A DNA stretch of 64,000 bases from IMGVR_UViG_3300021963_000023:62001-126000, one strand, 5' to 3'; counted from the first letter of the stretch, positions 2,872-53,376 are shown. The notes: generated by a model not told the origin, from the sequence alone. Numbers and translations: made by a program.

Positions 2872-4890
2872 TTATATAATCTTCGTTTTTATCAATAATT
2901 TTTCTTTAAATGTAATTTTTAGGGGTGTGTTTTCTTTAATATTACCCTTTAAAATTTCATCACTAAGAAAATCTTCACAAAGAGATTGAATAATTCTTTT
3001 GATTGGTCTGGCTCCATACTGCTCATCTTTGTTTCTTTTAGCAATTTCACTCATAACACTAGCATCGAAGGTAATAAAATATTTTTTCTCATTTAAACGA
3101 TCTGTTAAACGATCCATTTCAAGTTTTATAATCTTCTTAATTGCTTCTTCACCTAATGGATTAAATAAAACTATATCATCGATTCTATTCAAGAACTCAG
3201 GATTGAATTGTTGCTTAAGCGATTTCTGAATAATTGTTTTTTTAACTTCATATTGTTGATTCTCACTACTACTAGTATTAAACCCAACACCACCACCAAA
3301 TTCTGATACTTTTTTAGCACCAATATTTGATGTCATAATAATCAATGTATTTGTGAAGTTTACTTTCCTACCAAATGCGTCGGTTAAATGACCTTCGTCT
3401 AGTATTTGTAACAATAAATTAAACACATCCTTGTGCGCCTTTTCTATCTCATCAAATAAAATCACAGAAAACGGATTATTCTTAATTTTTTCTGTTAATT
3501 GACCACCCTCTTCATAACCAACATAACCTGGAGGTGACCCAATCAATCTAGATACCGTATGCTTTTCCATGTACTCACTCATATCAACACGAATAACATT
3601 ATCTTCTGATCCAAAAATCAATTTAGATAATGTTTTTGCTAGATATGTTTTACCAACACCGGTAGAACCAAGAAATATAAAAGAACCAATTGGTTTTTTG
3701 CTATCTTTAATTCCAACCCTATTTCTTCTAATTGATTTAGATATTGTAGTAATCGCTTCGTCTTGGCCAATAACCCTTTCTGATAATTTAACTTCTAAAT
3801 TTATTAAATTAGAAACCTCATTACTATCCATTTTAGAAATTGGGATACCAACCATACTCGATACCATATCATAAACATCATCAACACTAACTGGTATTAA
3901 CGAATCGTTTTGTTTAGCTAACCATTTAGCCTTTTCATCATCTAATTTTTTGATGACCTTTTTTTCTTCGTCTCTTAGTTTTGCGGCTTCTTCATAAACT
4001 TGTTTTTTAACAACTTCATGTTTCTTTTCTTTAATTGTTTCAATTTCTTTTTTTAATTTCTCAATTATTTCAGGGACCTTTGTTACAACACGCTTTTCTG
4101 AACCTAATTCATCTAAAACATCAATAGCTTTATCTGGAAATTGTTTATCTGTCATAAATCTTCCTGATAATCTTACTATTGTTTCAACAACCTCATCACC
4201 ATATGATACTTTATGAAATCCCTCATATGATTTTTTTAAATTTTTTAAAATCTCAACCGTTTCGTCTTCAGTTGGTTCTTTTAAAATAATTTTTTGAAAT
4301 CTTCTTACTAGGGCACCGTCTTTTTCAATATGTTTTTTGAATTCATCAAATGTTGTTGCACCAATACATTGCATTTCACCTCTTGCTAATGCAGGTTTTA
4401 AAATATTAGCCGCATCCATTGAACCAGAAGCATTTCCAGCGCCAACCATCGTATGTATTTCATCAATAAAAACAATAACATCGGGATTTTCCTGTAATTC
4501 ATGTAAAATGGCTTTAATTCTCTCTTCAAATTGACCTCGATATTTTGTACCTGCGACTAACGAAGTTAAGTCAAGTGATACTAATCTTTTATCAATTAGA
4601 TTAGATGGGCAATCTCCCTTAGATATCATTAATGCCAGTTTTTCAACTAATGCAGATTTACCAACACCAGCTTCACCAACAATAATCACATTATTTTTTT
4701 TCTTTCTTGAAAGGATTTGCGCAATTCTTTTAACTTCTTTATCCCTACCAATAACTGGATCAATTTTATCTTCTTCTGCTAACTTAATTAAGTCTCTAGA
4801 AAAATTGTCTAATATTGGTGTGTTTGAATTAACTCTTTTGTTTTTAGGGTTAGTTCTGGGGTTTTCTTCATAACCAAATTCTACTGCCAT
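2872..4890 (-). CDS. clpC: ClpC-like AAA+ chaperone/protease ATPase lacking the N-terminal domain
   Basis: Two AAA modules (GEAGVGKS, GSTGVGKT), GTKYRGQFE and PPGYVGY pore loops, UVR-like M domain, VGF ClpP-docking loop. Confidence 0.9.
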   Translation of the reverse strand: MAVEFGYEENPRTNPKNKRVNSNTPILDNFSRDLIKLAEEDKIDPVIGRDKEVKRIAQILSRKKKNNVIIVGEAGVGKSALVEKLALMISKGDCPSNLIDKRLVSLDLTSLVAGTKYRGQFEERIKAILHELQENPDVIVFIDEIHTMVGAGNASGSMDAANILKPALARGEMQCIGATTFDEFKKHIEKDGALVRRFQKIILKEPTEDETVEILKNLKKSYEGFHKVSYGDEVVETIVRLSGRFMTDKQFPDKAIDVLDELGSEKRVVTKVPEIIEKLKKEIETIKEKKHEVVKKQVYEEAAKLRDEEKKVIKKLDDEKAKWLAKQNDSLIPVSVDDVYDMVSSMVGIPISKMDSNEVSNLINLEVKLSERVIGQDEAITTISKSIRRNRVGIKDSKKPIGSFIFLGSTGVGKTYLAKTLSKLIFGSEDNVIRVDMSEYMEKHTVSRLIGSPPGYVGYEEGGQLTEKIKNNPFSVILFDEIEKAHKDVFNLLLQILDEGHLTDAFGRKVNFTNTLIIMTSNIGAKKVSEFGGGVGFNTSSSENQQYEVKKTIIQKSLKQQFNPEFLNRIDDIVLFNPLGEEAIKKIIKLEMDRLTDRLNEKKYFITFDASVMSEIAKRNKDEQYGARPIKRIIQSLCEDFLSDEILKGNIKENTPLKITFKEKLLIKTKII

Positions 4891-5053: not shown

Positions 5054-5422
5054 ATGATTACATTATTTAAAGATCCATTCTTCGATGCGTTTGATAAAGT
5101 ATTAGATGCATCTCGCTACAATGTTAGCCCACAAACTAATATTCACAAAACAGAAAGTGAATATAAAATCTCAATGTCAATACCTGGTTTAACCAAGGAT
5201 GACTTAAAGATTACCATAAAAGATGGTGTTTTAAGAATCTCTTTTGAAAAGGATGAGAAAAACGAAAGAACACATTTCATTGGTAATTTTATAAAATCTT
5301 ATACAATACCTGATGATGTTAAAGAAAAAGATGTTATGGGTAATGTTGAGAATGGTGTATTGACATTGACACTACCAATCGATAAAAAGAAATCGATTGA
5401 GAGGCTCATTTCTCTTAATTAA
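5054..5422 (+). CDS. small heat-shock protein Hsp20 (alpha-crystallin domain)
   Basis: PGLTKDDLKI, F.KSY.IPDDV, ENGVLTLTLP. Confidence 0.92.
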   Translation: MITLFKDPFFDAFDKVLDASRYNVSPQTNIHKTESEYKISMSIPGLTKDDLKITIKDGVLRISFEKDEKNERTHFIGNFIKSYTIPDDVKEKDVMGNVENGVLTLTLPIDKKKSIERLISLN

Positions 5423-10416: not shown

Positions 10417-10429
10417 CATATTTATATAT

Positions 10430-12217
10430 ATGAGTCAAAAAATAGAACAATTAAAAGAGTATGCTCGCATAATAAAAGATACTCCATACGCACTTAAAAC
10501 ATATCTTCAAACCTTTGATAATACACAGAGAAAGTTTGTACCATTAGAGTTGTTTCCGGATCAAATACAATTATTAAAAGATTACGAAACATATAACGAG
10601 AATATCACAAGAAAATATCGTCAAGCTGGTGTTACAACAGTAACGGCCGCATGGTTATCAAAAAAATTACAATTAGCAAAACCAGAAAACCCAGAAAGGG
10701 TTTTGATTATCGCAAACAAGCGTGATACCGCAATTGAGATGGCGAATAAAGTTCGTCACTTTTTAGATCAATGGCCAGAATGGATTAATGTGGGGTTTTC
10801 ACCAGATAAAAATTCAGAAAGTAGATTTAGGTTAAATAACGGATCAGAGGTAAAAGCTGTGGCCACATCTGCGGATGCTCTTCGTGGTTTTACACCAACG
10901 ATATTAGTATTTGATGAGGCCGCGTATATTGAGGCTGGAGATGACTTCTGGGCGGCTTCTATGGCCTCGTTATCAACCGGTGGTAAGATTATATTAATCT
11001 CAACGCCAAATGGCTACGATCCAATTTATTACGGTGTTTATGAACAAGCAATAAGAGGTATTAATGATTTTCATATAACCGATTTAAGATGGTTTAAAGA
11101 TCCTAGATATACTAAAGATTTAGTTTGGATTAAAGTTCCCGATATTGTGCATTACATGTTGAACAGAGAACAATATAATGATGATGAGATTATTTTAAAG
11201 GAATTTGATATAACAAAATACCAAGAATTAATGGATGAGGGTTATCAACCATATTCAAATTGGTTTGAGTCCATGTCCAAAAAATTCAAATATGACAAAA
11301 GAAAAATAGCACAAGAACTTGAATGTGATTTCTTGGGTTCCGGTGATAGCGTTATACCAAATGAAACAATGGAAAAAATCGCTAAAACAATGGTTAAAGT
11401 ACCAAAAGAAAAATATATGCAAGGTTTGCTTTGGCAATGGAATGAACCAGTTCAGGGTCATAGATATATTATGGGAGTTGATGTTAGTAGAGGAGATAGC
11501 GAGGATTTTTCATCAATTAATATTATTGATTTTGATGAAAGGGAGCAAGTTGTTGAATATGTTGGTAAAATGCCACCAGATGATTTAGCATCTGTCGCTT
11601 ATAAATGGGGTGTATTATATGATGCGTTTATTGTAATTGATATAACAGGTGGTATGGGTGTTGCAACATCAAGAAAATTGCAAGAAATGAATTATAAAAA
11701 CTTATTCATTGATGGTATTAATACCAAGAATGTTTGGGAATATAATGCAAAAGCAATGGAAAAAATACCTGGTATTAATTTTAACAATAAAAGAACACAA
11801 ATAGTTTCAGCATTTGAGGAACAATTGAGACATGATTTTATTGTTAGATCACATAGGCTTTTAAATGAACTCAATACCTTTGTTTATATAAATGGTAGAC
11901 CGGATCACATGAAAGGACAACATGACGATTCTATTATGAGTTTAGCAATTGCGTTATATGCTGGAGAGATATCGTTTACACAATTAGTTAGAAATGAACA
12001 GCAAAACAAAGCAATGTTAGATTCTTGGGTTATGTCTGAAAGAACATATCAATCGCCACAAACAGAAACATACTCATATGGTACTAGCTTTGATCAGGTT
12101 GGTATGATGCAGATTGATAGTTCACCATATGCTAAGAGTAATACTAACGGAACGCCAGCAAAAGAACAGTACAATCAATATTCTTGGTTGTTTGGAACAA
12201 ATAAAAAGGCTTTATAA
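10430..12217 (+). CDS. terminase large subunit (T4 gp17-like)
   Basis: RQAGVTT Walker A variant, LVFDEAA Walker B, ISTPNG, QELECDF, nuclease GVDVSRG and HDDSIMSLA; ATG 10430 chosen because it lies after the terminator and promoter motif. Confidence 0.93.
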   Translation: MSQKIEQLKEYARIIKDTPYALKTYLQTFDNTQRKFVPLELFPDQIQLLKDYETYNENITRKYRQAGVTTVTAAWLSKKLQLAKPENPERVLIIANKRDTAIEMANKVRHFLDQWPEWINVGFSPDKNSESRFRLNNGSEVKAVATSADALRGFTPTILVFDEAAYIEAGDDFWAASMASLSTGGKIILISTPNGYDPIYYGVYEQAIRGINDFHITDLRWFKDPRYTKDLVWIKVPDIVHYMLNREQYNDDEIILKEFDITKYQELMDEGYQPYSNWFESMSKKFKYDKRKIAQELECDFLGSGDSVIPNETMEKIAKTMVKVPKEKYMQGLLWQWNEPVQGHRYIMGVDVSRGDSEDFSSINIIDFDEREQVVEYVGKMPPDDLASVAYKWGVLYDAFIVIDITGGMGVATSRKLQEMNYKNLFIDGINTKNVWEYNAKAMEKIPGINFNNKRTQIVSAFEEQLRHDFIVRSHRLLNELNTFVYINGRPDHMKGQHDDSIMSLAIALYAGEISFTQLVRNEQQNKAMLDSWVMSERTYQSPQTETYSYGTSFDQVGMMQIDSSPYAKSNTNGTPAKEQYNQYSWLFGTNKKAL

Positions 12218-12262
12218 TTCAATAAAAATTGATTAGATTAATTACAATAGTATTTATATAGT

Positions 12263-14065
12263 ATGGCGAATCAAGATTTGACAGTTTTTCAGAAATTAAC
12301 TAAAATATTCGGCTTTCAGAATAAAGGAGAGCAGAGCCCATCTTTTAACTTTTCGAGAGAAGAGTTACTTAAGACCGATGACCCAGTTGAATTTGAAAAA
12401 GCAAGATTACAAGCACAACAATCCCAGTATCTTTTTGATAAGTGGGCTAAATTGGATAATTCATTATATAACCAATCGGTATATTATGAACCAAACAGAT
12501 TAGCAGCTTATTATGATTATGAGTCTATGGAGTTTACTCCAGAGGTATCTGCCGCGTTAGACATTTACGCAGAAGAATCAACAACAGTTTCAGAAAAGGG
12601 ATATATTTTAAATGTGTACTCTGAATCAAAAAGAGTAAAAAATGTTTTAATAGATTTATTTGAAAATAGATTAGATATTAACACTAACCTACAAATGTGG
12701 GCTAGAAACGTATGTAAGTATGGTGACAACTTTGTTTATCTAAAGAGTGATCCAGAAAGAGGTATTGTTGGTTGCCAACAATTACCAAACATTGAAATTG
12801 AAAGAATTGAGGGTGCACAATCAAAAAATCCAACTGCTGGCGATATAAAATCTCCGATTCGCGAATTGCGATTTCAGTGGAAAAACAAGGATATGGAGTT
12901 TCAATCTTGGGAGCTTGCTCACTTTAGATTATTAGGTGATGATAGAAAGTTACCCTACGGTACTTCTATGTTAGATAAGATTAGAAGAATTTGGAAACAA
13001 CTTTTACTTGCTGAAGATGCTATGTTAATTTATAGAACATCAAGGGCACCTGAAAGACGCGTATTTAAAATATTTGTTGGAAACATGGATGATAAAGATA
13101 TCGAACCATATGTACAACGTGTTGCAAATAAATTTAAAAGAGATCAGGTAGTAGATAGTAGAAACGGTCAGGTGGATATGAGATATAACCAAATGGCTGT
13201 TGATCAGGATTATTTTATTCCTGTTCGTGATCCTGCAGCTCCTAGTCCAATTGAAACATTAGCTGGCGCACAAAACTTAGGTGAAATTGCGGATATCGAA
13301 TATATTCAAAAGAAGCTATTGGCAGCACTTCGTATTCCTAAGGCATTCTTAGGTTTTGAAGAGGTTGTTGGTGATGGTAAGAATCTTGCATTAATGGATA
13401 TTCGTTTTGCAAGAACCATTAATAGAATACAAAAGTCTTTAATACAAGAGTTAAATAAAATAGCATTAATTCATTTATATCTTTTAGGTTTAGAAGATGA
13501 ATTAGAGAATTTCACATTAGGTTTAACAAACCCATCTTCACAAGCAGATTTATTAAAGGTCGAGCAATGGAAAGAAAAAGTTACCTTATACAAAGACGCC
13601 ACTTCAGATCAATCTCAAATTGGTATATTACCAGTATCACATACTTGGGCTAAGAAAAACATTCTTGGTATGAGTGATAATGAAGTATTGTTAGATTTAC
13701 AACAACAACGTCTTGAAAGAGCTATGGGTACCGAATTACAAAACACAGCACAAATTATCAGAAGATCTGGTGTATTTGACGAAGTGGATAATAAATATGG
13801 TATACCTGAAGAGGAAAGAGCTAAGATAGAAGCACAGGCACCAGAAGGTGGTGAAGAGGGTGCATTAGGTGGTATGTCATCACCTACCCCAGCGGCCGCG
13901 CCATCTGGAGAACCATCAGAACCATTAAGTGAAAGAAAGAAATTTAGTAAGATTAGAAGTGTTTTAGGAGAATCTCAAGAAAATGATGATTTGTTTAATC
14001 TTGAAAAGGCACAGAAGAATATTTATGAAATAGAGAATAAATTGAACGACATTTTAAACGATTAA
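12263..14065 (+). CDS. portal protein (T4 gp20-like)
   Basis: EDAMLIYRTSRAPERRVF, DYFIPVR, IETLAGAQNLGEIADIEY. Confidence 0.95.
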   Translation: MANQDLTVFQKLTKIFGFQNKGEQSPSFNFSREELLKTDDPVEFEKARLQAQQSQYLFDKWAKLDNSLYNQSVYYEPNRLAAYYDYESMEFTPEVSAALDIYAEESTTVSEKGYILNVYSESKRVKNVLIDLFENRLDINTNLQMWARNVCKYGDNFVYLKSDPERGIVGCQQLPNIEIERIEGAQSKNPTAGDIKSPIRELRFQWKNKDMEFQSWELAHFRLLGDDRKLPYGTSMLDKIRRIWKQLLLAEDAMLIYRTSRAPERRVFKIFVGNMDDKDIEPYVQRVANKFKRDQVVDSRNGQVDMRYNQMAVDQDYFIPVRDPAAPSPIETLAGAQNLGEIADIEYIQKKLLAALRIPKAFLGFEEVVGDGKNLALMDIRFARTINRIQKSLIQELNKIALIHLYLLGLEDELENFTLGLTNPSSQADLLKVEQWKEKVTLYKDATSDQSQIGILPVSHTWAKKNILGMSDNEVLLDLQQQRLERAMGTELQNTAQIIRRSGVFDEVDNKYGIPEEERAKIEAQAPEGGEEGALGGMSSPTPAAAPSGEPSEPLSERKKFSKIRSVLGESQENDDLFNLEKAQKNIYEIENKLNDILND

Positions 14066-14067
14066 AA

Positions 14068-14817
14068 ATGAACAAATTCGGAACGATTAAAACCAAAATG
14101 TTAACTAAAATAACTGAATCTTATTCTAAACAAAATAAGAATGAAGTAAAAGATATGTTAAACACAATTAAAGAAAACAAAGCATTTAAAGAAATGTATT
14201 TGTTTTATGAAGAAATTGAGAATAAATATTTTGACAATAAAGAGATCGCGATACTATATGTTGAGGGATTAAATACATATTTTGGTCAACCAATGGGTAA
14301 TTGGAATGATTTAAATGTCTTTTGCGAATCACTACATAAAAAATTGGGGGATATTAAAATTGAAACTAACGAACTATATGAATCTTTAGATATATTATCT
14401 GAAAAAGATTCATTATCAAATATTGAAAAAAAGGTTATTGCAAAAAAGAAACTAGTTGAACATTTAACAACAAAAAAGTCAGTAAAAACCATTGTTGAGG
14501 ATAGTACATATACAGCAAATGAAAATTTGTTGCATGCGGTATTAGTAAACAATTTTAACACATTATATGAGAATACATTATCTCAAGAAGATAAAGAAGC
14601 TCTTAAAAACATATTAGTATTAAATGGTGAGGAGTTGGTAACAAAAACATCTGAACTAAAAGAAGCTATCCTTACTAAGGTTCAAAATATACTATCAGAA
14701 TCTAAGGATACTGATTTAGGTGTAAAACTTGAATCAGTTAGAACTGAGGTTACCACAATGGAACCATCAAAATATAACTACTACAGATTAACACAATTAA
14801 AAAATGGTCTTGATTAA
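14068..14817 (+). CDS. hypothetical protein in head module
   Basis: 249 aa helical ORF directly after portal. Confidence 0.65.
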   Translation: MNKFGTIKTKMLTKITESYSKQNKNEVKDMLNTIKENKAFKEMYLFYEEIENKYFDNKEIAILYVEGLNTYFGQPMGNWNDLNVFCESLHKKLGDIKIETNELYESLDILSEKDSLSNIEKKVIAKKKLVEHLTTKKSVKTIVEDSTYTANENLLHAVLVNNFNTLYENTLSQEDKEALKNILVLNGEELVTKTSELKEAILTKVQNILSESKDTDLGVKLESVRTEVTTMEPSKYNYYRLTQLKNGLD

Positions 14818-15005
14818 TTCAGACCATTTTTTAACTTTTCCACATAAACGGCTTTTAATACTTCGGCTCTTCTTTTAACTGAAGGCTTAACAAACTTTTC
14901 TCTTTCCCTTAGTTTTTGGATTTGTTTAGTTTTTTGTACTTTACTTTTGTAACTTTTAAGAGCAGATTCAATGCTCTTTTCTTTTTTCATGTCAATTATA
15001 ATCAT
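14814..15005 (-). CDS. rpsU: ribosomal protein bS21 (phage-encoded)
   Basis: SIESALKSYKSK...LRERE.FVKPSVKRR...KAVY is the bS21 signature with a Bacteroidetes-type C-terminus. Confidence 0.92.
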   Translation of the reverse strand: MIIIDMKKEKSIESALKSYKSKVQKTKQIQKLREREKFVKPSVKRRAEVLKAVYVEKLKNGLN

Positions 15006-15104
15006 AATTTATAAATATTTTTATTTAAATTTTTGGAATATTAAGAAATTTTTCTTATTTTTTACTATATCACCATAATATAAGTAAAATTATGAAAAAA
15101 ATTA

Positions 15105-15533
15105 ATGAAAATTGGAAAATTTATTCCATTAGAAGACCACAAGGATGTAAAAGTTGGTTATGGAACAGTAGATTTTAAAAATCTAAAGACCATTTATGTA
15201 AAAATGAATGCCTGGGTAGAACCAGATAATGAAAACGAAAATTTTGATAAAACAATCTCTAAAGCAAGAAAGAAGATAAAAGACTTCATTCGAGACTATA
15301 ATTTAGGTGAAAACTTTAAAAAAGAAAGTATTGTAGATTTAGACATTAGAACAAAGGGAATTAAATTAAATAAAAGGTCATTTATGAATCTAGAGATCAC
15401 TTTATTTGTTGATAAATTTTTTGATGTTAAGAGTATTTTAATTAAGAATTTACTAAAAAAATTCACTAGTGAGTCAATAGATCTGTGTTTAGGGGATAAA
15501 ACATTATTCAATTTTAATAAAACTAAGATTTGA
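15105..15533 (+). CDS. hypothetical protein
   Basis: 142 aa ORF divergent from rpsU. Confidence 0.7.
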   Translation: MKIGKFIPLEDHKDVKVGYGTVDFKNLKTIYVKMNAWVEPDNENENFDKTISKARKKIKDFIRDYNLGENFKKESIVDLDIRTKGIKLNKRSFMNLEITLFVDKFFDVKSILIKNLLKKFTSESIDLCLGDKTLFNFNKTKI

Positions 15534-15575
15534 TTTAATTATCCTTGTATTTATATGGTATATTAATATATCATA

Positions 15576-16265
15576 ATGAAAGTATTAGGGCCTAATGAAT
15601 CTGGAAGAGGACTATTGATTGAGTATGACGCAGGTCACATATCTCCAGAAGAGTTAAAAAACAAAAACATAATAACAGAAATACAGAATAAGGATACTGA
15701 TCAAGATCTTATTCTGTATGCTGTTTTACAAAAATATGATACCCCCAATAAGAACGGAAGGATTTATCCTGAATCGTTACTTAAAAGGGAAAATGACAAG
15801 TATCAACAAATAATCAGTAAAGGTTCGGCACTTAACGAACTTAATCATCCATCATCATCACTTATTGATTTAGATAGAGTTTCCCACACAATTACAGAAA
15901 CGTGGTGGGATGGTAGAACCCTAATGGGTAAAATTAAAATATTAACATCTCCAGGTTGGAAAAAAATGGGGATTGTTAGTTGTAAAGGTGATCAAGCAGC
16001 CATGCTACTTATAAATGGCGTTACATTAGGTATTTCTTCAAGAGGCGTTGGTTCATTAAAACAAATAAAAGGACAGAACATTGTACAAGATGATTTTGAA
16101 TTGGTTTGTTTTGATTTGGTATCATCACCATCAACACCAGGAGCTTACGTCTTTCAAGACATGGCTGATAAAGATAAATTCAACGAAACTATTGAAGAAA
16201 AGCCAACAATGGATAACAGATTAAAAAAATTAATGGGTAACCTAGACACTTTTCTTAAGAGATAA
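15576..16265 (+). CDS. prohead core protease (T4 gp21-like)
   Basis: NKNGRIYP, ELNHP, LGISSRGVGSL, FDLVSSPSTPGAY. Confidence 0.93.
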   Translation: MKVLGPNESGRGLLIEYDAGHISPEELKNKNIITEIQNKDTDQDLILYAVLQKYDTPNKNGRIYPESLLKRENDKYQQIISKGSALNELNHPSSSLIDLDRVSHTITETWWDGRTLMGKIKILTSPGWKKMGIVSCKGDQAAMLLINGVTLGISSRGVGSLKQIKGQNIVQDDFELVCFDLVSSPSTPGAYVFQDMADKDKFNETIEEKPTMDNRLKKLMGNLDTFLKR

Positions 16266-16357
16266 ACAATAAAACATTAAAAAATCATCTATTTTGATAT
16301 TAAAAAAGAGATTTTTTTAATTACGTACATATTTATATAGTAAATCAAACAAAAATA

Positions 16358-17554
16358 ATGAGCGAAAAATCGATTTTAGAACAAGCACTACTTCAAGTTA
16401 ATACACTTGAAGAAGCAGTAAAGCAAAATGCAAAAGGTATACTTTCTTCAGTAATGAAGCAAGAACTAAACGAATTGCTTAAAGAATCAGAAGAAGAGGA
16501 AGAAGCAGCAGATGCTGTTGATCCTGAAACAGAGGAAAACGACATGTCAGAGCAGCCAGCAGATGATGAAGATGCAGCTGATGATGAAGATGAAATCCCC
16601 TCGATAAATGATGAACCATCAAAAGATATCGATGGTGAAGACGAAGAAGAAGAAGACGATGAGTTTTCTACTGACGACGAATCACCTGAAATGGAAGACG
16701 ATGAGTTTCCATCTATGGATGATATGGCATCAGATGATGACGATACATTAGACATGACAGGAGCCGCAGATGATGAGGTTCTAAAGGTGTTTAAAGCAAT
16801 GTCAGATGAAGATGGTATTATCGTTAAAAAAGATGGTAACAACATTGAACTTACAGATGCTGATGATGAGTACATTATTAAGTTAGCAGAATCAGAAGAA
16901 GAGGAAGAAGAAGAAATGTCTGAAGACTCTTATCAAGAAGGCGCTAAAGATGATGTTGCAGACGAAGAAACTATCTATGAGATTGAGTTAGACGACGAAG
17001 ACGAAGAAGAAATGTCTGAAGAAGATGTTCCTGCTGAAGAGGAAGTTGGCGAAGCTGCTCATACTAAGTGGAACGTACATGGTGGTAAAAGAGCTGGATT
17101 AACAAGCAAAAAAGTTTTTGCGGCCGGTGCTAAAAATGAAACAAAAAAAGCATCAAAAGCAATTAACGAAGAAGTTGAAAATCTTAGAAAACAAAATGGC
17201 GAATATAAAAAAGCGTTAATTCTGTTTAAAGATAAATTAAACGAAGTTGCTGTATTCAACGCTAACCTTGCTTATGCAACTAGACTATTTACTGAACATT
17301 CAACAACAAAACAGGAGAAATTGAATATTTTGAAGAAATTTGATTCAATCTCTACTATAAACGAATCTAAAAATCTTTACAATTCTATCAAAGCAGAATT
17401 AGACACTAAAAAACCAGTGACTGAGACTGTAGCAGGTAAAATTGCTAATACAGCATCAACATCTTCTTCTCAAGAAGTTTTATCTGAGTCAAAAGCTTAC
17501 GAAGCCCCTCAGTTTAAGAGAATGAGAGATTTGATGAGTAAATTAAATAAATAA
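16358..17554 (+). CDS. prohead core scaffold protein (gp22-like)
   Basis: Very acidic centre, coiled-coil C-terminus, located between protease and capsid. Confidence 0.75.
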   Translation: MSEKSILEQALLQVNTLEEAVKQNAKGILSSVMKQELNELLKESEEEEEAADAVDPETEENDMSEQPADDEDAADDEDEIPSINDEPSKDIDGEDEEEEDDEFSTDDESPEMEDDEFPSMDDMASDDDDTLDMTGAADDEVLKVFKAMSDEDGIIVKKDGNNIELTDADDEYIIKLAESEEEEEEEMSEDSYQEGAKDDVADEETIYEIELDDEDEEEMSEEDVPAEEEVGEAAHTKWNVHGGKRAGLTSKKVFAAGAKNETKKASKAINEEVENLRKQNGEYKKALILFKDKLNEVAVFNANLAYATRLFTEHSTTKQEKLNILKKFDSISTINESKNLYNSIKAELDTKKPVTETVAGKIANTASTSSSQEVLSESKAYEAPQFKRMRDLMSKLNK

Positions 17555-17580
17555 AAAAAAACTAAAACCAAATATTAAAA

Positions 17581-19314
17581 ATGGGAGCATTATTAGAATC
17601 AGGTATGGTAGGTAACATCGGTTTAAAACACCTTAGAGTTATCAAAGAAGATACCATCAAAAAATGGGATGACTTAGGATTCCTAGAAGGCCTAGACGGT
17701 CATCAAAAAGATAACATCGCGCAATTGTATGAAAACCAAGCGTCTTACTTAATCAACGAAGCAGCAGTTTCTGACGCTTCTGGTTCTTTCGAGACAGTGG
17801 TATTCCCAATTATCCGCCGTGTATTCTCTAAATTATTAGCAAACGATATCGTTTCTGTACAAGCAATGAACTTACCAATTGGTAAATTGTTCTACTTCGT
17901 ACCTAAAATTCAAGAAAGACAATCAGGCGCACACACTGCACCTTATGGTATGCCAGGTAATTCTGACGCATCTACCTTAGGTTATAGCACTGGTACCAAC
18001 GATCCAAGAAGTTTATATGATCGTTTTTACGAAGCAAATGATGCTGCTGATACTGGTATCTATGATTATTCTAAAGGAGCTTACTCTGCAGTAACTTTAA
18101 CAGGTGCTACAGTTGTAACTTTCGCTAACGGAGCAACTACAGATGTAGCTAACGCTAACGTAACAGGTACTTCAGTTTCTGACTTAATCATTAAATTCAC
18201 AGGATTTGCAAAAGATGGTCAAGGTAAATTAATCGGGCCAAATGGTTCTGTAATGGATACTGAAGATTTCTTAGCTTCTGCTGTAGTTAACTACGCAGGT
18301 GTAGCAAGAAACTTTAACATTGTTACACAAAAATATGGTAAAGGTATTGTTGAATATGGTCAAAAATCAACTTCAGCATCATATCCTTCAGGAAGATACC
18401 AAGATATTTGTGATGAAGAAGGTACAATTTACATAAAAGTAGATTTACAATCTTACAGCGCAACTTCAGGTTTCTCTAACCTTACTGTTCCTTCAGGTTT
18501 CACTTCAGCTGGTGTAACATTAGTTTTCAGAGTTTACGATTCATTAGAATTTGAAGATCAAATTGGTGAAGTATCTTTTGATTTAGCTTCTGTAACAGTT
18601 TCTGTAACTGAAAGAAAATTAAGAGCTAGCTGGTCTCCAGAATTAGCACAAGACGTTTCTGCGTTTCATAACATCGATGCTGAAGCTGAATTAACAGCTT
18701 TATTATCTGAGCAAATCGCTGCTGAGGTTGACCGTGAAATTTTACGTGACCTTAGAAAAGGTGCTGCTTGGACTGCTAAGTGGGATTATAACGAGTGGAA
18801 ATATGGTGCAACTGGAAGCACTCCGTTCATGGGTTATACTCAGAAGGATTGGAACCAAACATTGGTTACTAAAATTAACCAATTATCAGCTCAAATTCAC
18901 AAGACTACATTAAGAGGTGGTGCAAACTGGATCGTTGTTTCTTCAGAAGTTTCTGCAGTATTCGATGATTTAGAGTATTTCCACGTATCTAATGCAGGTC
19001 CAGAGCAAGATCAGTACAACATGGGTATCGAGAAAGTTGGTACACTTGCTGGACGTTATCAAGTATACCGTGATCCATACTTACCAGCAGGTAAGATCCT
19101 TGTAGGTCACAAAGGTAAGTCACTATTAGACGCAGGTTATATCTACGCTCCATATGTGCCGTTACAGTTAACTCCAACAATGTACAATCCATTTAACATG
19201 ACTCCGATCAAAGGTATCATGACACGTTACGCAAAGAAAATGGTGAACAACCGTTACTTCGGTGTAATCAACGTAAGTGGTTTACAAACGTTCGATATGA
19301 ATACTTTAAGATAA
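17581..19314 (+). CDS. major capsid protein (T4 gp23-like)
   Basis: VSVQAMNLPIG, RKLRASWSPELAQD, EVDREI, YAPYVPL, GIMTRY. Confidence 0.97.
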   Translation: MGALLESGMVGNIGLKHLRVIKEDTIKKWDDLGFLEGLDGHQKDNIAQLYENQASYLINEAAVSDASGSFETVVFPIIRRVFSKLLANDIVSVQAMNLPIGKLFYFVPKIQERQSGAHTAPYGMPGNSDASTLGYSTGTNDPRSLYDRFYEANDAADTGIYDYSKGAYSAVTLTGATVVTFANGATTDVANANVTGTSVSDLIIKFTGFAKDGQGKLIGPNGSVMDTEDFLASAVVNYAGVARNFNIVTQKYGKGIVEYGQKSTSASYPSGRYQDICDEEGTIYIKVDLQSYSATSGFSNLTVPSGFTSAGVTLVFRVYDSLEFEDQIGEVSFDLASVTVSVTERKLRASWSPELAQDVSAFHNIDAEAELTALLSEQIAAEVDREILRDLRKGAAWTAKWDYNEWKYGATGSTPFMGYTQKDWNQTLVTKINQLSAQIHKTTLRGGANWIVVSSEVSAVFDDLEYFHVSNAGPEQDQYNMGIEKVGTLAGRYQVYRDPYLPAGKILVGHKGKSLLDAGYIYAPYVPLQLTPTMYNPFNMTPIKGIMTRYAKKMVNNRYFGVINVSGLQTFDMNTLR

Positions 19315-26881: not shown

Positions 26882-27580
26882 TTATTCTAAAAATCCACCT
26901 AAAACACCGTCATATAAAAGTTTATATCTTTTAAGGGATATTCTAATTTCTTTTGTTGATAATGATGTCATCTCTCTTAGAGACAGGAGGATTAAATTCT
27001 TATTGAACTTATTGCCATCACCTATTTGAAATATTTGGTCAAAATTGCTAAATATTTCTAAGAGGGCATAGCCTAGTTTTTTCTCATTATCCGTTAGATC
27101 TTCTTTTTCAATAAAATCTTCCAATTTGTTGGTTAGATTGATTATAACATTGGTATAATCTATATGATACTCATCAATTGTATATGAAAACTCAACCCTG
27201 CTTTCAATATCTTCAGATATGTCCTCATATGAAATACTCCTATTTTGCTCCTTGGTATCTTTTTGGATTGCCCCCATTAAGTAGTTCTTACAAATGGTTC
27301 CAAAATAGGAATAGGCTTTGTGGTTTTTTGTGTGATCAAACTTGTTGATCTTAGTTATTAAAAAAGACATGGTATCAGTATGAATCTCTTCAAATTCCAT
27401 GTCTTTTCTGTATAGTTTATAACGTCGAATAATTGATTCGACCATTATAATTAGGGGTTCACGTAAATATTCGTTGAATATCTTATTCCTTTCCGCATCG
27501 TCAGTACTTTCTAAGTATTTAACTACTGCCTTTTCTTGATCCTCCCCAAAATAAACTTTTTGGGTTCTTTTTCTTGGCAT
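26882..27580 (-). CDS. phage sigma factor, T4 gp55-like (late transcription)
   Basis: Region-2-like KINKFDHTKNHKAYSYFGTICKNYL resembles gp55 FD....N.F.YFT. Confidence 0.65.
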   Translation of the reverse strand: MPRKRTQKVYFGEDQEKAVVKYLESTDDAERNKIFNEYLREPLIIMVESIIRRYKLYRKDMEFEEIHTDTMSFLITKINKFDHTKNHKAYSYFGTICKNYLMGAIQKDTKEQNRSISYEDISEDIESRVEFSYTIDEYHIDYTNVIINLTNKLEDFIEKEDLTDNEKKLGYALLEIFSNFDQIFQIGDGNKFNKNLILLSLREMTSLSTKEIRISLKRYKLLYDGVLGGFLE

Positions 27581-38407: not shown

Positions 38408-38430
38408 AATAAACAAACTATTTATAACAT

Positions 38431-38799
38431 ATGGAATTTTTTATAAGACAGGGCGCAAGTGACCCAATATTAAAAATGAGACTAATTGATGATGGTAAAA
38501 ACGATAAATCTTCATTTAACGATTTATTGGAAAATACAGACATTACATTTGAAATGTATGACCATAAAACTGGCGAGCCATCTGTTTTAAATGCCCAGTG
38601 TTTTTTAACAACCAGAAACAAAAAATACAATCAGACAACATTGGAATATTATATAACATACAGATTTACAGAGCTTCAGACCGCAAAACCAGGTAAGTTT
38701 GAAGGTAAAATTAATATTCAATTTCTAGACACAAACTCAACAAAAACAACAAAACTTATCCTACCAGTACGAGAAAAATTATATATTAATATCATATAG
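38431..38799 (+). CDS. BppU-N-like structural protein
   Basis: FFIRQG..P.L...Y.F...T..PGKFEG...I.F....LILP pattern. Confidence 0.5.
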   Translation: MEFFIRQGASDPILKMRLIDDGKNDKSSFNDLLENTDITFEMYDHKTGEPSVLNAQCFLTTRNKKYNQTTLEYYITYRFTELQTAKPGKFEGKINIQFLDTNSTKTTKLILPVREKLYINII

Positions 38800-38896
38800 T
38801 TTTTGTTTTTTTCGGAAATTTTACTTATTTTTATGGTTAATTAAGGCTAACTACGGGAATCCCGTAAGCTAATGTGTCATCCATAAATTATAAATC

Positions 38897-51414: not shown

Positions 51415-51429
51415 AACTATTTATATAAT

Positions 51430-53376
51430 ATGGCAGATAATAGAGAAGATTTTTTAAAATTTTTAAAAAGCTTAGGTATTGATGATTCAGATGCAAAAGC
51501 TGGTGCGGATAGGTATCAAAAATCTATCGACGAATTAGCATCAAAAGCATCTAGAGCATCAAGAACATCAACCACTAGTGGTACAGGTAGTGTTATTAAC
51601 GCACTAGGCGCTGGATTTATCGATCAACAGGTAAACACTTTAGGTAGAATTAGTACAAGTACAGGTAAAGCAATACTTGAAGGTATTAATAAAAGTGCCT
51701 CATTTAATCCAGTAACAATTATAAAGGGTGTATTAGATGGTGCATTAAAGGGTGGTGAAGCCATACTTGGGGATTTAGCTGAATTAGACAAAGAATTACT
51801 AGAACGAGTTAGAGGTGCAGGAGGATATGTAGGGGATGCTGCAACAGACATGATGAGATCAGTTAGGGTTGCTATGATTGCAGCGCAAGAAGCTGGTGCA
51901 TCTACAGATGATACATTAGGTGCTGTAAAAAGCCTAATGGAAAACTCTGAAAGAATGTCTATCTATGCAGAAAAAACAATTTCAGATGGAATGCTAGCTT
52001 CCGTTGCTTTTACCAAAAATGCTAGAACAATATTAGAAAATGCTGAAAACTTTAGAAACGTTGGTATAGGTTTAGATGATGCATCTAAATCAATTACCGC
52101 CATAGGTATGGATTCGGTAAAGTTAGGTTTAAATGCTAAAGCAACTTCTGAAACATTAATTAAAAATTTAGGTAGCTTAAATGCATATGGATTCCAAAAC
52201 GGAATTAAAGGTTTAGGTAAAATGGTCCAAGAGGCACAATCACTTAAAATCAATATGGATGATGTGCTAAAGGTTGCTGATAAATTATATGATCCAGAAA
52301 GTGCAATTAACCTTGCTGCAAATCTACAAGTTGTTGGAGGTGCGTTTGGTGATTTAAACGATCCAATTAAATTAATGTATGATGCAACAAATAATGTTGA
52401 ATCATTACAAACAAGTATTATTGGCGCTGCTAGAAGTTTAGCAACATATAATGTTGAACAAGGTAGGTTTGAAGTAACAGGAGTCAATTTAAGACGTGCT
52501 AAAGCTATGTCTGATGCTTTAGGTATATCAATGGGTGAATTAACTAATATGGCTGTTAAAGGGGCTGCTAAGTTCGAAGCGATGAGCCAATTAGACATAT
52601 TCCCATCTTTAAATGATGAACAAAAAGAGTTTGTTTCAAATTTAGCAACAATGAAAGATGGTAAAGTTGGTTTTGATATTCCTAAAAGTATGGTCGAAAG
52701 ACTTGGTTTAGATAATGTTAAAGATGGTTTCGTTGGATTAAGTGATTTATCAGATAAACAAATTGTGCAACTACAAGCGATGCAAAAAAGTGCAGCAGAT
52801 GAAAAACCAATAGACATCGCAAGAAATCAATTTAATGAAACAACAAAAATATTAAATGTTGCAACAGCAATTTACTTAAGGATGATGGATGATGGAAGAA
52901 AGGGACCAATAGGTCAAACAGCATCAAAAGGTATGGAAGCGGCAGCTAATTTTATGCAAAAAACATTTAACCCATCTGAAGATAGTACTGGAGAAACAGT
53001 TAAAAAATTAGCTGGCGCAGCTATAGATGCTGGTGGTGAGGCAATGTCTGCAGTTGCTGATTATATGAAAAATTTAAGTCCAGAGATGATGGAAACACTT
53101 GGTTTACTTAAGAAAAAACTTAGTGAAGCAACAAAAGATATAAATGTTGAAGATATTAAAAATAAAGCAGGAGAAATGCTTGAAAAAGGCGGCGAGAAAG
53201 CAAAAGAAGCATATGATGAAATTAAAAAATTCTTTGGGGAACTTACTGTAAAGGTTGATATTAATAGTAATAGCCCAGAATTAGCCGGTATTGTTGTTAA
53301 TGAAATATCTAGAAATCCACAATTAAGAGCTGATCTCGCATCGAACATAGTTAAGAACACTAAAAACTACACATAA
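51430..53376 (+). CDS. tape measure-like protein
   Basis: Ala/Gly-rich helical 648 aa ORF after tube and chaperone. Confidence 0.7.
   Translation: MADNREDFLKFLKSLGIDDSDAKAGADRYQKSIDELASKASRASRTSTTSGTGSVINALGAGFIDQQVNTLGRISTSTGKAILEGINKSASFNPVTIIKGVLDGALKGGEAILGDLAELDKELLERVRGAGGYVGDAATDMMRSVRVAMIAAQEAGASTDDTLGAVKSLMENSERMSIYAEKTISDGMLASVAFTKNARTILENAENFRNVGIGLDDASKSITAIGMDSVKLGLNAKATSETLIKNLGSLNAYGFQNGIKGLGKMVQEAQSLKINMDDVLKVADKLYDPESAINLAANLQVVGGAFGDLNDPIKLMYDATNNVESLQTSIIGAARSLATYNVEQGRFEVTGVNLRRAKAMSDALGISMGELTNMAVKGAAKFEAMSQLDIFPSLNDEQKEFVSNLATMKDGKVGFDIPKSMVERLGLDNVKDGFVGLSDLSDKQIVQLQAMQKSAADEKPIDIARNQFNETTKILNVATAIYLRMMDDGRKGPIGQTASKGMEAAANFMQKTFNPSEDSTGETVKKLAGAAIDAGGEAMSAVADYMKNLSPEMMETLGLLKKKLSEATKDINVEDIKNKAGEMLEKGGEKAKEAYDEIKKFFGELTVKVDINSNSPELAGIVVNEISRNPQLRADLASNIVKNTKNYT

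What the first reader, a model, noticed from the sequence alone, without database searches (positions are those of the whole stretch)
14814..15017. Phage bS21 keeps the anti-SD-sequestering Tyr54 and sits under the late motif with essentially no leader
Seen: rpsU lies antisense inside the head module, TATTTATA is 4 nt from its ATG, and residue 54 is Tyr (KAVY). Known: bS21 next to head genes is described in large freshwater Bacteroidetes phages; in Flavobacterium, bS21 Tyr54 helps occlude the anti-Shine-Dalgarno, and host rpsU is autoregulated through a strong SD. Inference: the phage copy has no room for an SD, escapes that feedback, and may tune ribosomes toward leaderless or SD-less late transcripts. 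A sigma + leaderless mRNA + bS21 link would be a coherent late-expression system.
Basis: partly seen in the sequence, partly recalled or inferred. Interest (0 to 1): 0.75.

Follow-up and report, generated by a model that had tools for sequence, protein, structure and literature searches.

The report
Phage bS21 gene on leaderless-type late promoter
A large phage of lake Flavobacteria carries its own copy of ribosomal protein bS21, as already published for this phage group; its start codon sits 4 bases after a conserved late-promoter box, so its mRNA probably has no leader, but many other late genes share this layout.

Summary
Every observation is confirmed. Window 14814-15005 (-) encodes a 63-aa bS21. 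It aligns without gaps to Flavobacterium johnsoniae bS21 and keeps Tyr54. It lies antisense between portal and prohead protease, and TATTTATA ends 4 nt before its ATG.

The gene, its antisense position, Tyr54 and late expression were already published (Chen 2022, PMC9723584). The promoter analysis appears to be new.
- TATTTATA is the dominant upstream signal of this 251-kb genome and precedes 43 genes.
- It has no -35 partner and is invariant across distant relatives.
- It co-occurs with a gp55-like sigma.
- Motif-to-ATG gaps are bimodal: 3-7 nt (19 genes, mode 4) or 11 nt and more.
- The host -7 element occupies -12 to -5, with 4-5 nt to the start site. A 4-nt gap therefore predicts transcription starting at the A of AUG.

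No 5' end could be mapped, so leaderless status is inferred.

No Shine-Dalgarno sequence exists upstream, so escape from host rpsU autoregulation is plausible. The proposed link between bS21 and leaderless translation is weak. Short gaps are three times commoner in bS21-encoding genomes (35/86 versus 9/71), but they also occur in relatives without bS21, and the comparison is one phylogenetic contrast.

The parts
14814..15005 (-). bS21 (rpsU) coding sequence, 63 aa, Tyr54 present
   Evidence: In 39 distinct relatives Met1 and Tyr54 are invariant.
15010..15017 (-). TATTTATA late-promoter (-10/-7-type) box, 4 nt upstream of the ATG
   Evidence: Conserved at this register in relatives.
15005..15005 (-). 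Predicted transcription start, the A of the AUG (inferred, not mapped)
   Evidence: The F. johnsoniae -7 element spans -12..-5 with 4-5 nt to the start site (PMC6847099). The 5th base after the motif is A in 35 of 44 sites. Gaps are bimodal.
14795..14836 (.). Bidirectional intrinsic-terminator hairpin (A-tract, stem, U-tract). Its loop holds the overlapping stop codons of bS21 (14814-14816) and of the convergent 249-aa ORF (14815-14817).
   Evidence: dG -17.8 kcal/mol, z -5.5, 0 of 200 shuffles fold as well. Sequence.
15105..15533 (+). Divergent 142-aa ORF, the 'bS21_CN' neighbour of Chen 2022. It has no TATTTATA but a conserved CACCATAA box.
   Evidence: RNA contigs begin at 15084 and 15086.
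12251..12265 (+). Same arrangement at the portal gene: TATTTATA, 4 nt, ATG
   Evidence: The gap is 3-5 nt in nearly all of the 35 distinct relatives' contexts.
10419..10432 (+). Same arrangement at the large terminase: TATTTATA, 3 nt, ATG, directly after a terminator-like hairpin
38419..38433 (+). Same arrangement (4 nt) at a 122-aa ORF upstream of the family-B DNA polymerase
51418..51432 (+). Same arrangement (4 nt) at a 648-aa ORF in the tail/baseplate region
15548..15555 (+). Leadered version of the motif, 20 nt before the prohead protease ATG
16330..16337 (+). Leadered version of the motif, 20 nt before the 398-aa scaffold-like ORF. RNA depth rises here.
   Evidence: Depth goes from 2-6 to 60-80 in bin 16237-16433.
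26882..27580 (-). gp55-like small sigma factor, the candidate reader of TATTTATA
   Evidence: T4 gp55 E 2e-4. Sigma70_r2 19-21 bits, below the cut-off. Atlas clusters are named sigma factor. hhalign to gp55 gives probability 23%. The top 41 PDB fold matches, and nearly all of the 50 listed, are sigma factors, at weak E-values. Homologues are in all four motif-using genomes tested.

Best explanation
The ORF is a phage-encoded ribosomal protein bS21 of the freshwater Bacteroidetes myophage group already described by Chen et al. 2022.

It forms its own minimal transcription unit of about 210 nt. The unit starts with an 8-bp late-promoter box, TATTTATA, and ends at a bidirectional terminator hairpin that contains its stop codon.

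The box is inferred to be read by host RNA polymerase carrying the phage gp55-like sigma. It has no -35 partner, as in T4 late promoters. Placed in the register of the host -7 element (-12 to -5), it puts the transcription start on the A of the AUG. The mRNA is therefore probably leaderless.

With no leader and no Shine-Dalgarno sequence, synthesis of the phage protein cannot be governed by the host rpsU feedback. That feedback relies on an extended Shine-Dalgarno sequence read by ribosomes that lack bS21.

The protein keeps Tyr54 and the C-terminal region that occlude the anti-Shine-Dalgarno sequence. It is therefore expected to load onto host 30S subunits and keep them in the state that ignores Shine-Dalgarno sequences.

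Leaderless architecture is a general feature of about 40% of late promoters in this lineage (terminase, portal and others), not a device peculiar to bS21.

Shown: gene identity, motif, spacing, conservation, absence of a Shine-Dalgarno sequence, and the terminator. Inferred: promoter function, the sigma assignment, the exact start site, ribosome incorporation, and escape from feedback.
For: Identity. Context identical to Chen 2022.

The motif is real and promoter-like:
- 43 genes carry it, and 55% of copies lie upstream in sense orientation, against 9% for composition-matched 8-mers.
- It gives the top de novo 7-mers.
- No conserved -35 box is present. T is avoided at the base before the motif, and the 4th and 5th bases after it are A in 20 and 21 of 25 long-gap sites.
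- It often follows terminator hairpins directly.
- It precedes TerL, portal, protease, a head-tail adaptor and the tail tube.
- It is invariant upstream of portal, protease and the scaffold-like gene while the flanks diverge.
- It is present upstream of portal in clades down to 44% portal identity and in the cultured Flavobacterium phage immuto.

Leaderless geometry:
- Gaps are bimodal, 3-7 nt and 11 nt or more, with none at 8-10 in this genome. In relatives' head-module loci the values are 3-6 nt, then 15 nt or more.
- The host -7 element lies at -12..-5 with 4-5 nt to the start site.
- Among bS21 relatives the 4-nt register is kept even where the motif carries one mismatch.
- The first 45 nt of the mRNA are unstructured.

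No Shine-Dalgarno sequence. Terminator. The sigma co-occurs with the motif in genomes with and without bS21, whereas the second sigma is confined to bS21-encoding genomes. RNA depth rises at the motif at 16330.
Against: No 5' end was mapped. The metatranscriptome contigs do not cover 14858-15054, and no start clusters were reported.

With the published T4 register (-13..-6), the start would fall one base later, on the U of AUG, for a 4-nt gap.

The sigma assignment is weak: Pfam is below its cut-off, hhalign gives 23%, Foldseek E-values are 0.04 and worse, and no PHROG matched. No T4 gp45 homologue was found.

Most motif-linked genes have no annotation, so 'late' rests on the few that do. One motif-linked small ORF sits just upstream of the DNA polymerase.
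Confidence: 0.6

Rival explanations
1. One reading: phage bS21 specifically adapts host ribosomes to initiate on leaderless, 5'-AUG late phage mRNAs. Sigma, leaderless transcripts and bS21 would then form one late-expression system.
For: Short gaps are three times more frequent in bS21-encoding genomes (35/86 against 9/71, Fisher p 1.4e-4). The head-module loci show 38/91 against 6/173.

The portal gap is 3-5 nt in nearly all bS21-clade relatives. It is 14-34 nt in seven portal lineages with no bS21 at the locus.

Phage bS21 has invariant V23, Q24 and Q28 in the N-terminal helix that faces the mRNA, differing from the host residues (Chen 2022).
Against: The two sets are two clades, so the comparison is one evolutionary contrast.

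Genomes without bS21 still carry real, conserved ORFs with TATTTATA-N3-4-ATG. Host ribosomes with host bS21 presumably translate these.

In E. coli, leaderless lambda cI translation is favoured by ribosomes lacking uS2 and bS21.

One bS21 clade has an 18-nt gap and another has a weak Shine-Dalgarno-like leader. About 60% of motif-linked genes in this phage are leadered.
Confidence: 0.15
2. TATTTATA is a promoter, but transcription starts inside or just before the box or spacer, giving very short leaders (about 2-10 nt) rather than a 5'-terminal AUG. Initiation would then use the ordinary Shine-Dalgarno-independent, A/U-rich 30S pathway of Bacteroidetes.
For: Start-site choice was not measured. 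The T4 register differs by one base. Gaps of 5-7 nt occur in this genome. Bacteroidetes initiation does not need a Shine-Dalgarno sequence (PMC6847099).
Against: A start inside the -10/-7-type element is not how sigma70-family holoenzymes behave. The sharp 3-5 nt mode and the empty 8-10 nt range fit a switch between a 5'-AUG and a leader long enough for 30S binding.
Confidence: 0.15
3. The box acts at the RNA level, as a processing site or a translation-initiation element on longer transcripts, and is not a promoter.
For: The box is A/U-rich and lies close to many start codons. Portal and terminase could also be read from upstream transcripts.
Against: The distance to the ATG ranges from 3 to about 50 nt, unlike a ribosome-binding element. 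bS21 is the only minus-strand gene in its neighbourhood, so it needs its own promoter within 99 nt, and the box is the only conserved element immediately upstream of the ATG. The box often follows terminators, and RNA depth rises at the box at 16330. Its form and register resemble the host -7 element TAHHTTTG at 6 of 8 positions.
Confidence: 0.07

Closest known systems
bS21-encoding freshwater Bacteroidetes myophages (Chen et al. 2022, ISME Commun, PMC9723584)
   Same: bS21 lies on the reverse strand between two conserved hypothetical genes inside TerL-portal-protease-MCP. Tyr54 is conserved and the N-terminal helix is divergent. GC is about 32%, the genome is large and carries many tRNAs, and hosts are lake Bacteroidetes.
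   Different: Nothing about the gene itself differs. The paper does not mention promoter, motif, UTR, leaderless or sigma. The TATTTATA box, the 4-nt register, the terminator and the comparison with bS21-less relatives are additions.
Flavobacterium johnsoniae bS21 / rpsU (Jha 2021, PMC7797042; McNutt 2023, PMC9976891; PDB 7JIL)
   Same: The protein is 63 against 64 aa and aligns without gaps. Tyr54 and the basic C-terminal helix that occlude the anti-Shine-Dalgarno sequence are retained.
   Different: Host rpsU carries an extended Shine-Dalgarno sequence (below -13 kcal/mol) for autoregulation by bS21-less ribosomes. The phage gene has none (+1.3 kcal/mol) and probably no leader. Residues 21, 23, 24 and 28 differ (S, V, Q, Q against R, F, D, T).
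T4 late transcription (gp55 sigma, gp33, gp45 clamp; promoter TATAAATA at -13..-6)
   Same: A T4-like head and tail module, an 8-bp A/T-only box without a -35 element upstream of morphogenesis genes, and a small divergent phage sigma.
   Different: The box is TATTTATA. Its two central bases are swapped relative to TATAAATA, and it also equals the reverse complement of TATAAATA. It matches the Bacteroidetes -7 element TAHHTTTG at 6 of 8 positions. No gp45 homologue was detected. About 40% of the boxes abut the start codon, which is not described for T4.
Leaderless mRNAs (lambda cI from pRM; abundant in Actinobacteria, Deinococcus and archaea)
   Same: A -10-type element a few bases upstream of an AUG, no Shine-Dalgarno sequence, and an unstructured 5' coding end.
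   Different: The host phylum is mostly leadered: 87% of F. johnsoniae leaders exceed 10 nt. Here the class is a phage late regulon. 5' ends have not been mapped.
Flavobacterium phage vB_FspM_immuto (MW353175) and immuto-like IMG/VR genomes
   Same: The same TATTTATA box precedes TerL, portal, tail sheath and other genes, and the same gp55-like sigma is present.
   Different: No bS21. Gaps are mostly 10-25 nt. Only 9 of 71 motif-linked genes have gaps of 7 nt or less.

Membership tests
Ribosomal protein bS21 (PF01165) | Profile match above the curated cut-off | tested here: met
   43.8 bits against 27, residues 4-54.
Ribosomal protein bS21 (PF01165) | Full-length collinear match to a bS21 seen in a solved ribosome | tested here: met
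   7JIL_z, E 5e-13, residues 1-62 gapless. 9I5V chain 9, E 1.3e-10.
Bacteroidetes-type bS21 | [quoted passage not shown] | tested here: met
   Tyr54 aligned to Tyr54. 39 of 39 distinct relatives have Tyr.
Ribosomal protein bS21 | Incorporation into the 30S subunit | not testable with these tools
   Needs ribosome purification or proteomics from infected or expressing cells.
bS21 phages of Chen et al. 2022 | bS21 antisense between two conserved hypothetical genes within TerL-portal-protease-MCP | tested here: met
   The same order is seen in 10 independent metagenome contigs and 80 IMG/VR loci.
bS21 phages of Chen et al. 2022 | GC 31-33.7%, genome about 290-330 kb, many tRNAs | tested here: met
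   GC 32.3%, 251 kb at an estimated 75% completeness, 21 tRNAs.
bS21 phages of Chen et al. 2022 | Bacteroidetes host | tested here: inconclusive
   The closest cultured relative infects Flavobacterium. bS21 is closest to F. johnsoniae. No CRISPR or host link was tested.
Host-type rpsU autoregulation | Extended Shine-Dalgarno sequence pairing below -13 kcal/mol with the 16S tail | tested here: not met
   +1.3 kcal/mol for this gene. Relatives have a median of -1.0 and a best value of -6.5. The 16S tail was typed from general knowledge.
T4-type late promoter system | Short A/T-only -10-type box without a -35 element, upstream of morphogenesis genes | tested here: met
T4-type late promoter system | Consensus TATAAATA | tested here: not met
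   The box is TATTTATA.
T4-type late promoter system | gp55-family sigma encoded by the phage | tested here: inconclusive
   Weak but consistent signals. It co-occurs with the motif in four other genomes.
T4-type late promoter system | gp45 clamp and gp33 co-activator | tested here: inconclusive
   A T4 gp45 BLAST search found nothing in a contig that is 75% complete. gp33 was not searched.
Leaderless mRNA | Primary 5' end on the A of the AUG | not testable with these tools
   RNA contigs give no coverage of 14858-15054 and no 5'-end clusters.
Leaderless mRNA | AUG start, promoter box at start-site distance, no Shine-Dalgarno sequence | tested here: met
   The register equals that of the host -7 element.

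The most novel reading that the evidence does not exclude
In the bS21-encoding lineage of T4-like Flavobacteriia phages, about 40% of late transcription units, including bS21's own, are truly leaderless. Phage bS21 has an invariant phage-specific N-terminal helix and a host-like Tyr54 C-terminus. On this reading it retunes host ribosomes toward 5'-AUG mRNAs, and it also shuts off host rpsU through the host's own anti-Shine-Dalgarno-occlusion feedback.
Probability: 0.12. Interest if true: 0.85.

Novelty: new variant of a known kind. Interest (0 to 1): 0.5.

Why it matters
What phage-encoded bS21 does is an open question (Mizuno 2019; Chen 2022; McNutt 2023).

This analysis adds a concrete regulatory anatomy:
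- a conserved late-promoter box shared by T4-like Flavobacteriia phages;
- a probable class of leaderless late mRNAs in a phylum whose own mRNAs are mostly leadered;
- a phage rpsU that lies outside the host's Shine-Dalgarno-based feedback.

These points turn a vague 'ribosome hijack' idea into specific experiments. One compares leaderless and leadered reporters with and without phage bS21. Another tests the effect of phage bS21 on host rpsU translation. If the link fails, the box is still useful for annotating late genes and start codons in these abundant lake phages.

Tried and rejected
- Metatranscriptome contigs (4 RNA runs) laid on 12100-18000 gave no coverage over the bS21 5' end and no 5'-end clusters. 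They showed only a rise in depth at the box at 16330 and high capsid-gene depth.
- Contigs encoding the exact protein were all DNA metagenome contigs.
- PHROG scans of 30 motif-linked or neighbouring ORFs mostly returned nothing, so 'late' rests on the annotated few.
- The word-index protein search with the portal was saturated by relatives of 77% identity or more. The representative search was needed to reach intermediate clades.
- Whole records behind the intermediate-clade loci are not held, so absence of bS21 there is known only for 6 kb either side of the portal.
- T4 gp45 was not found.
- A literature search for the motif string found only unrelated primer sequences.
It was rerun without that row.
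- Met6 as an alternative start was rejected.
- Chance was rejected.
- The phage tRNA-CAT as an initiator was rejected, because position 1-72 is paired and the anticodon stem lacks the G-C run.

Full report
**1. Observation**

The window is bases 62001-126000 of a 251,149-bp IMG/VR phage contig with 32.3% GC and an estimated completeness of 75%.

The ORF at 14814..15005 on the minus strand encodes 63 aa.
- It matches Pfam Ribosomal_S21 at 43.8 bits against a cut-off of 27.
- Its best solved-structure relative is bS21 of the Flavobacterium johnsoniae ribosome (7JIL chain z, E 5e-13). The alignment is gapless over residues 1-62, and Tyr54 aligns to Tyr54.

All neighbouring genes are on the plus strand. 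In order they are the T4-type large terminase, the gp20-type portal, a 249-aa ORF, then bS21 on the minus strand, a 142-aa ORF, the S77 prohead protease, a 398-aa ORF and the gp23-type capsid protein.

On the minus strand TATTTATA occupies 15017..15010, followed by AATT and the ATG at 15005.

**2. What was already known**

Chen et al. 2022 (PMC9723584) described 47 genomes of this phage group. They reported the following:
- bS21 on the reverse strand inside the conserved TerL-portal-protease-MCP block;
- Tyr54 or another aromatic residue conserved;
- a divergent N-terminal helix;
- Bacteroidetes hosts;
- bS21 transcribed together with late structural genes.

The present gene fits that group. 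Residues 21, 23, 24 and 28 are S, V, Q and Q against R, F, D and T in the host protein. V23, Q24, Q28 and Y54 are invariant in 39 distinct relatives.

McNutt et al. 2023 (PMC9976891) showed that host rpsU is autoregulated. The mechanism uses an extended Shine-Dalgarno sequence (below -13 kcal/mol) read by ribosomes that lack bS21.

The Chen paper contains no mention of promoter, motif, UTR, leaderless or sigma.

**3. The motif is a real, orientation-specific upstream signal**

The plain count of TATTTATA in the window is not enriched (20 against 15.8 expected). Its placement is strongly non-random.
- Genome-wide, 43 genes have it within 60 nt upstream on the coding strand.
- That is 55% of all 78 copies, against a mean of 9% for the other 55 8-mers of the same composition.
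- In an unbiased 7-mer screen of upstream regions, the top words all derive from it. TATTTAT precedes 66 of 266 genes, a 10.5-fold enrichment.
- No second, -35-like conserved block is present.
- The base before the box is rarely T.
- The 4th and 5th bases after the box are A in 20 and 21 of 25 sites where the ATG is far away, and are never G.
- The box frequently follows a terminator-like hairpin.

Genes behind it that can be named are terminase, portal, prohead protease, a head-tail adaptor, the tail tube and a tail-fibre-like protein. Most others have no annotation.

**4. Conservation**

In 80 IMG/VR loci found with the bS21 protein, the box is invariant upstream of portal, protease and the scaffold-like gene while flanking bases diverge.

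Upstream of bS21, most clades have the box or a one-mismatch form (TACTTATA, TAATTATA, TATTTATT) exactly 4 nt before the ATG. There are two exceptions:
- One clade has an 18-nt gap.
- One clade has no box but carries a weak Shine-Dalgarno-like AAAGAGGA.

The N-terminus MIIID/N is universal. Met6 is present in only 5 of 39 distinct proteins, so the first ATG is the start.

The same box also precedes late genes in more distant phages:
- the cultured Flavobacterium phage immuto;
- 67 distinct immuto-like portal contexts;
- portal lineages down to 44% identity.

**5. Which sigma**

The window ORF 26882-27580 (-) shows several weak but consistent sigma signals.
- It is weakly similar to T4 gp55 (E 2e-4) and to Sigma70 region 2 (19-21 bits, below the cut-off).
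- It falls in viral clusters labelled sigma factor.
- It aligns collinearly with gp55 by hhalign at low probability (23%).
- Its AlphaFold model (pLDDT 62) gives sigma factors as the top 41 PDB fold matches and nearly all of the 50 listed, at weak E-values.
- Homologues exist in all four other motif-using genomes tested, with and without bS21.

A second, clearer sigma70-family ORF (G000 174112-174924) occurs only in the bS21-encoding genomes. The gp55-like protein is therefore the better candidate reader of the box. This is an inference.

**6. Leaderless geometry**

In this genome the motif-to-ATG gaps are bimodal.

| Gap class | Genes | Detail |
|---|---|---|
| 3-7 nt | 19 | 11 at exactly 4 nt |
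| 8-10 nt | 0 | none |
| 11 nt and more | 24 | leadered class |

In the relatives' head-module loci the values are 3-6 nt, and then 15 nt or more. At register -12..-5, TATTTATA is the commonest 8-mer of all genes, and no other 8-mer or offset comes close.

In F. johnsoniae the 8-bp -7 element TAHHTTTG spans T-12 to G-5, with 4 or 5 nt to the mapped start site (PMC6847099). The phage box matches that element at 6 of 8 positions. If it is read in the same register, a 4-nt gap puts +1 on the A of the AUG.

The published T4 register (-13..-6) would shift the start by one base. The exact start therefore remains an inference.

Three further points fit a leaderless mRNA for bS21:
- The first 45 nt of the coding sequence are unstructured.
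- bS21 is the only minus-strand gene in its neighbourhood, so it needs its own promoter.
- The box is the only conserved element immediately upstream of the ATG.

The unit ends in a strong hairpin at 14795-14836 (dG -17.8, z -5.5). Its loop contains the overlapping stop codons of bS21 and of the convergent 249-aa gene. The whole transcript would be about 210 nt.

**7. RNA evidence**

Contigs of four lake metatranscriptomes were laid on 12100-18000.
- They show almost no signal over portal and bS21.
- Depth rises from 2-6 to 60-80 in the bin that contains the box at 16330.
- Depth is very high over the capsid gene.
- No 5'-end clusters were reported, and nothing covers 14858-15054.

This is compatible with a promoter at 16330. 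It says nothing about the bS21 start.

**8. Shine-Dalgarno sequence and feedback**

The 30 nt upstream of the phage gene do not pair with the 16S 3' tail (+1.3 kcal/mol). The relatives have a median of -1.0, and the best value is -6.5. Host rpsU pairs at below -13. The defining feature of host-type autoregulation is therefore absent.

Escape from feedback follows logically but is untested. A corollary is that a phage bS21 able to occlude the anti-Shine-Dalgarno sequence would also lower translation of host rpsU. That is inference only.

**9. Is the leaderless class tied to bS21?**

Whole-genome counts of motif-linked genes with gaps of 7 nt or less:

| Genome | bS21 | Gaps of 7 nt or less |
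|---|---|---|
| This genome | yes | 19/43 |
| G006 (324 kb) | yes | 16/43 |
| immuto | no | 4/24 |
| G001 (complete) | no | 2/20 |
| G002 (complete) | no | 3/27 |

Pooled, the counts are 35/86 against 9/71, p 1.4e-4.

The portal gap is 3-5 nt in nearly all bS21-clade relatives. It is 14-34 nt in the immuto-like clade and in six further portal lineages whose loci show no bS21.

Against a causal link:
- These genomes form essentially one phylogenetic contrast.
- Genomes without bS21 do contain real ORFs with TATTTATA-N3-4-ATG. One is conserved between immuto and G001, and one sits next to the portal in L233.
- In E. coli, leaderless lambda cI mRNA is translated better by ribosomes lacking uS2 and bS21 (PMC10491246).

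**10. Verdict**

The gene and its headline features are already known. The additions are:
- a conserved late-promoter box;
- a probable leaderless class of late mRNAs that includes bS21, terminase and portal;
- a self-contained bS21 transcription unit;
- the demonstrated lack of any Shine-Dalgarno sequence.

The functional coupling of bS21 to leaderless initiation remains a speculative hypothesis that can be tested.

Noticed in passing
window 15018-15104 and relatives (L005-L084): The divergent 142-aa 'bS21_CN' gene has no TATTTATA box. It has a conserved CACCATAA(T) box and, in most relatives, a tiny upstream ATG or mini-ORF 11-15 nt before the main ATG. RNA contigs from two runs begin at 15084 and 15086, just after the box.
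   Followed up: partly
G000:C1:39720-50489 and 246799-246889 (outside the window): The phage encodes a tmRNA (39720-40116, tag ending ...NVAVA) and 21 tRNAs, 20 of them in one cluster. The tRNA-CAT does not look like an initiator.
   Followed up: partly
G000:C1:174112-174924 (+), outside the window: A second, clearer sigma70-family factor (regions 2 and 4) is present in the two bS21-encoding genomes tested. It is absent from three bS21-less genomes that use the same box.
   Followed up: partly
L078, L079 (IMG/VR relatives): One bS21 clade lacks the box at the ATG. It has instead a leader with AAAGAGGAAUCC, which resembles a decayed extended Shine-Dalgarno sequence (-6.3 kcal/mol). This may be a remnant of a host-type rpsU leader.
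   Followed up: partly
window 2872-4890 (-) and 5054-5422 (+): A ClpA/B/C-type double-AAA+ unfoldase and an Hsp20 are encoded near the head module. McNutt 2023 speculated that such phages might target host bS21 for proteolysis.
   Followed up: no
window 38431-41803 (+): A 122-aa ORF with the 4-nt box arrangement sits about 100 nt upstream of the family-B DNA polymerase. The box may therefore not be restricted to morphogenesis genes.
   Followed up: no
protein representatives P0121-P0270: Many portal homologues are 1000-1900 aa and match the query in 2-5 separated stretches. This suggests insertions such as inteins in the portal genes of related phages.
   Followed up: no
L239:9717-11394: In one distant relative, an IS605-type pair (Y1 transposase plus a TnpB/Cas12f-like protein) lies next to the portal region.
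   Followed up: no
L233:8604-9322: In a bS21-less intermediate clade, the slot between the portal-adjacent gene and the protease holds two other antisense genes (161 aa, and 75 aa with DUF4494). The antisense slot may be a recurrent insertion site.
   Followed up: no
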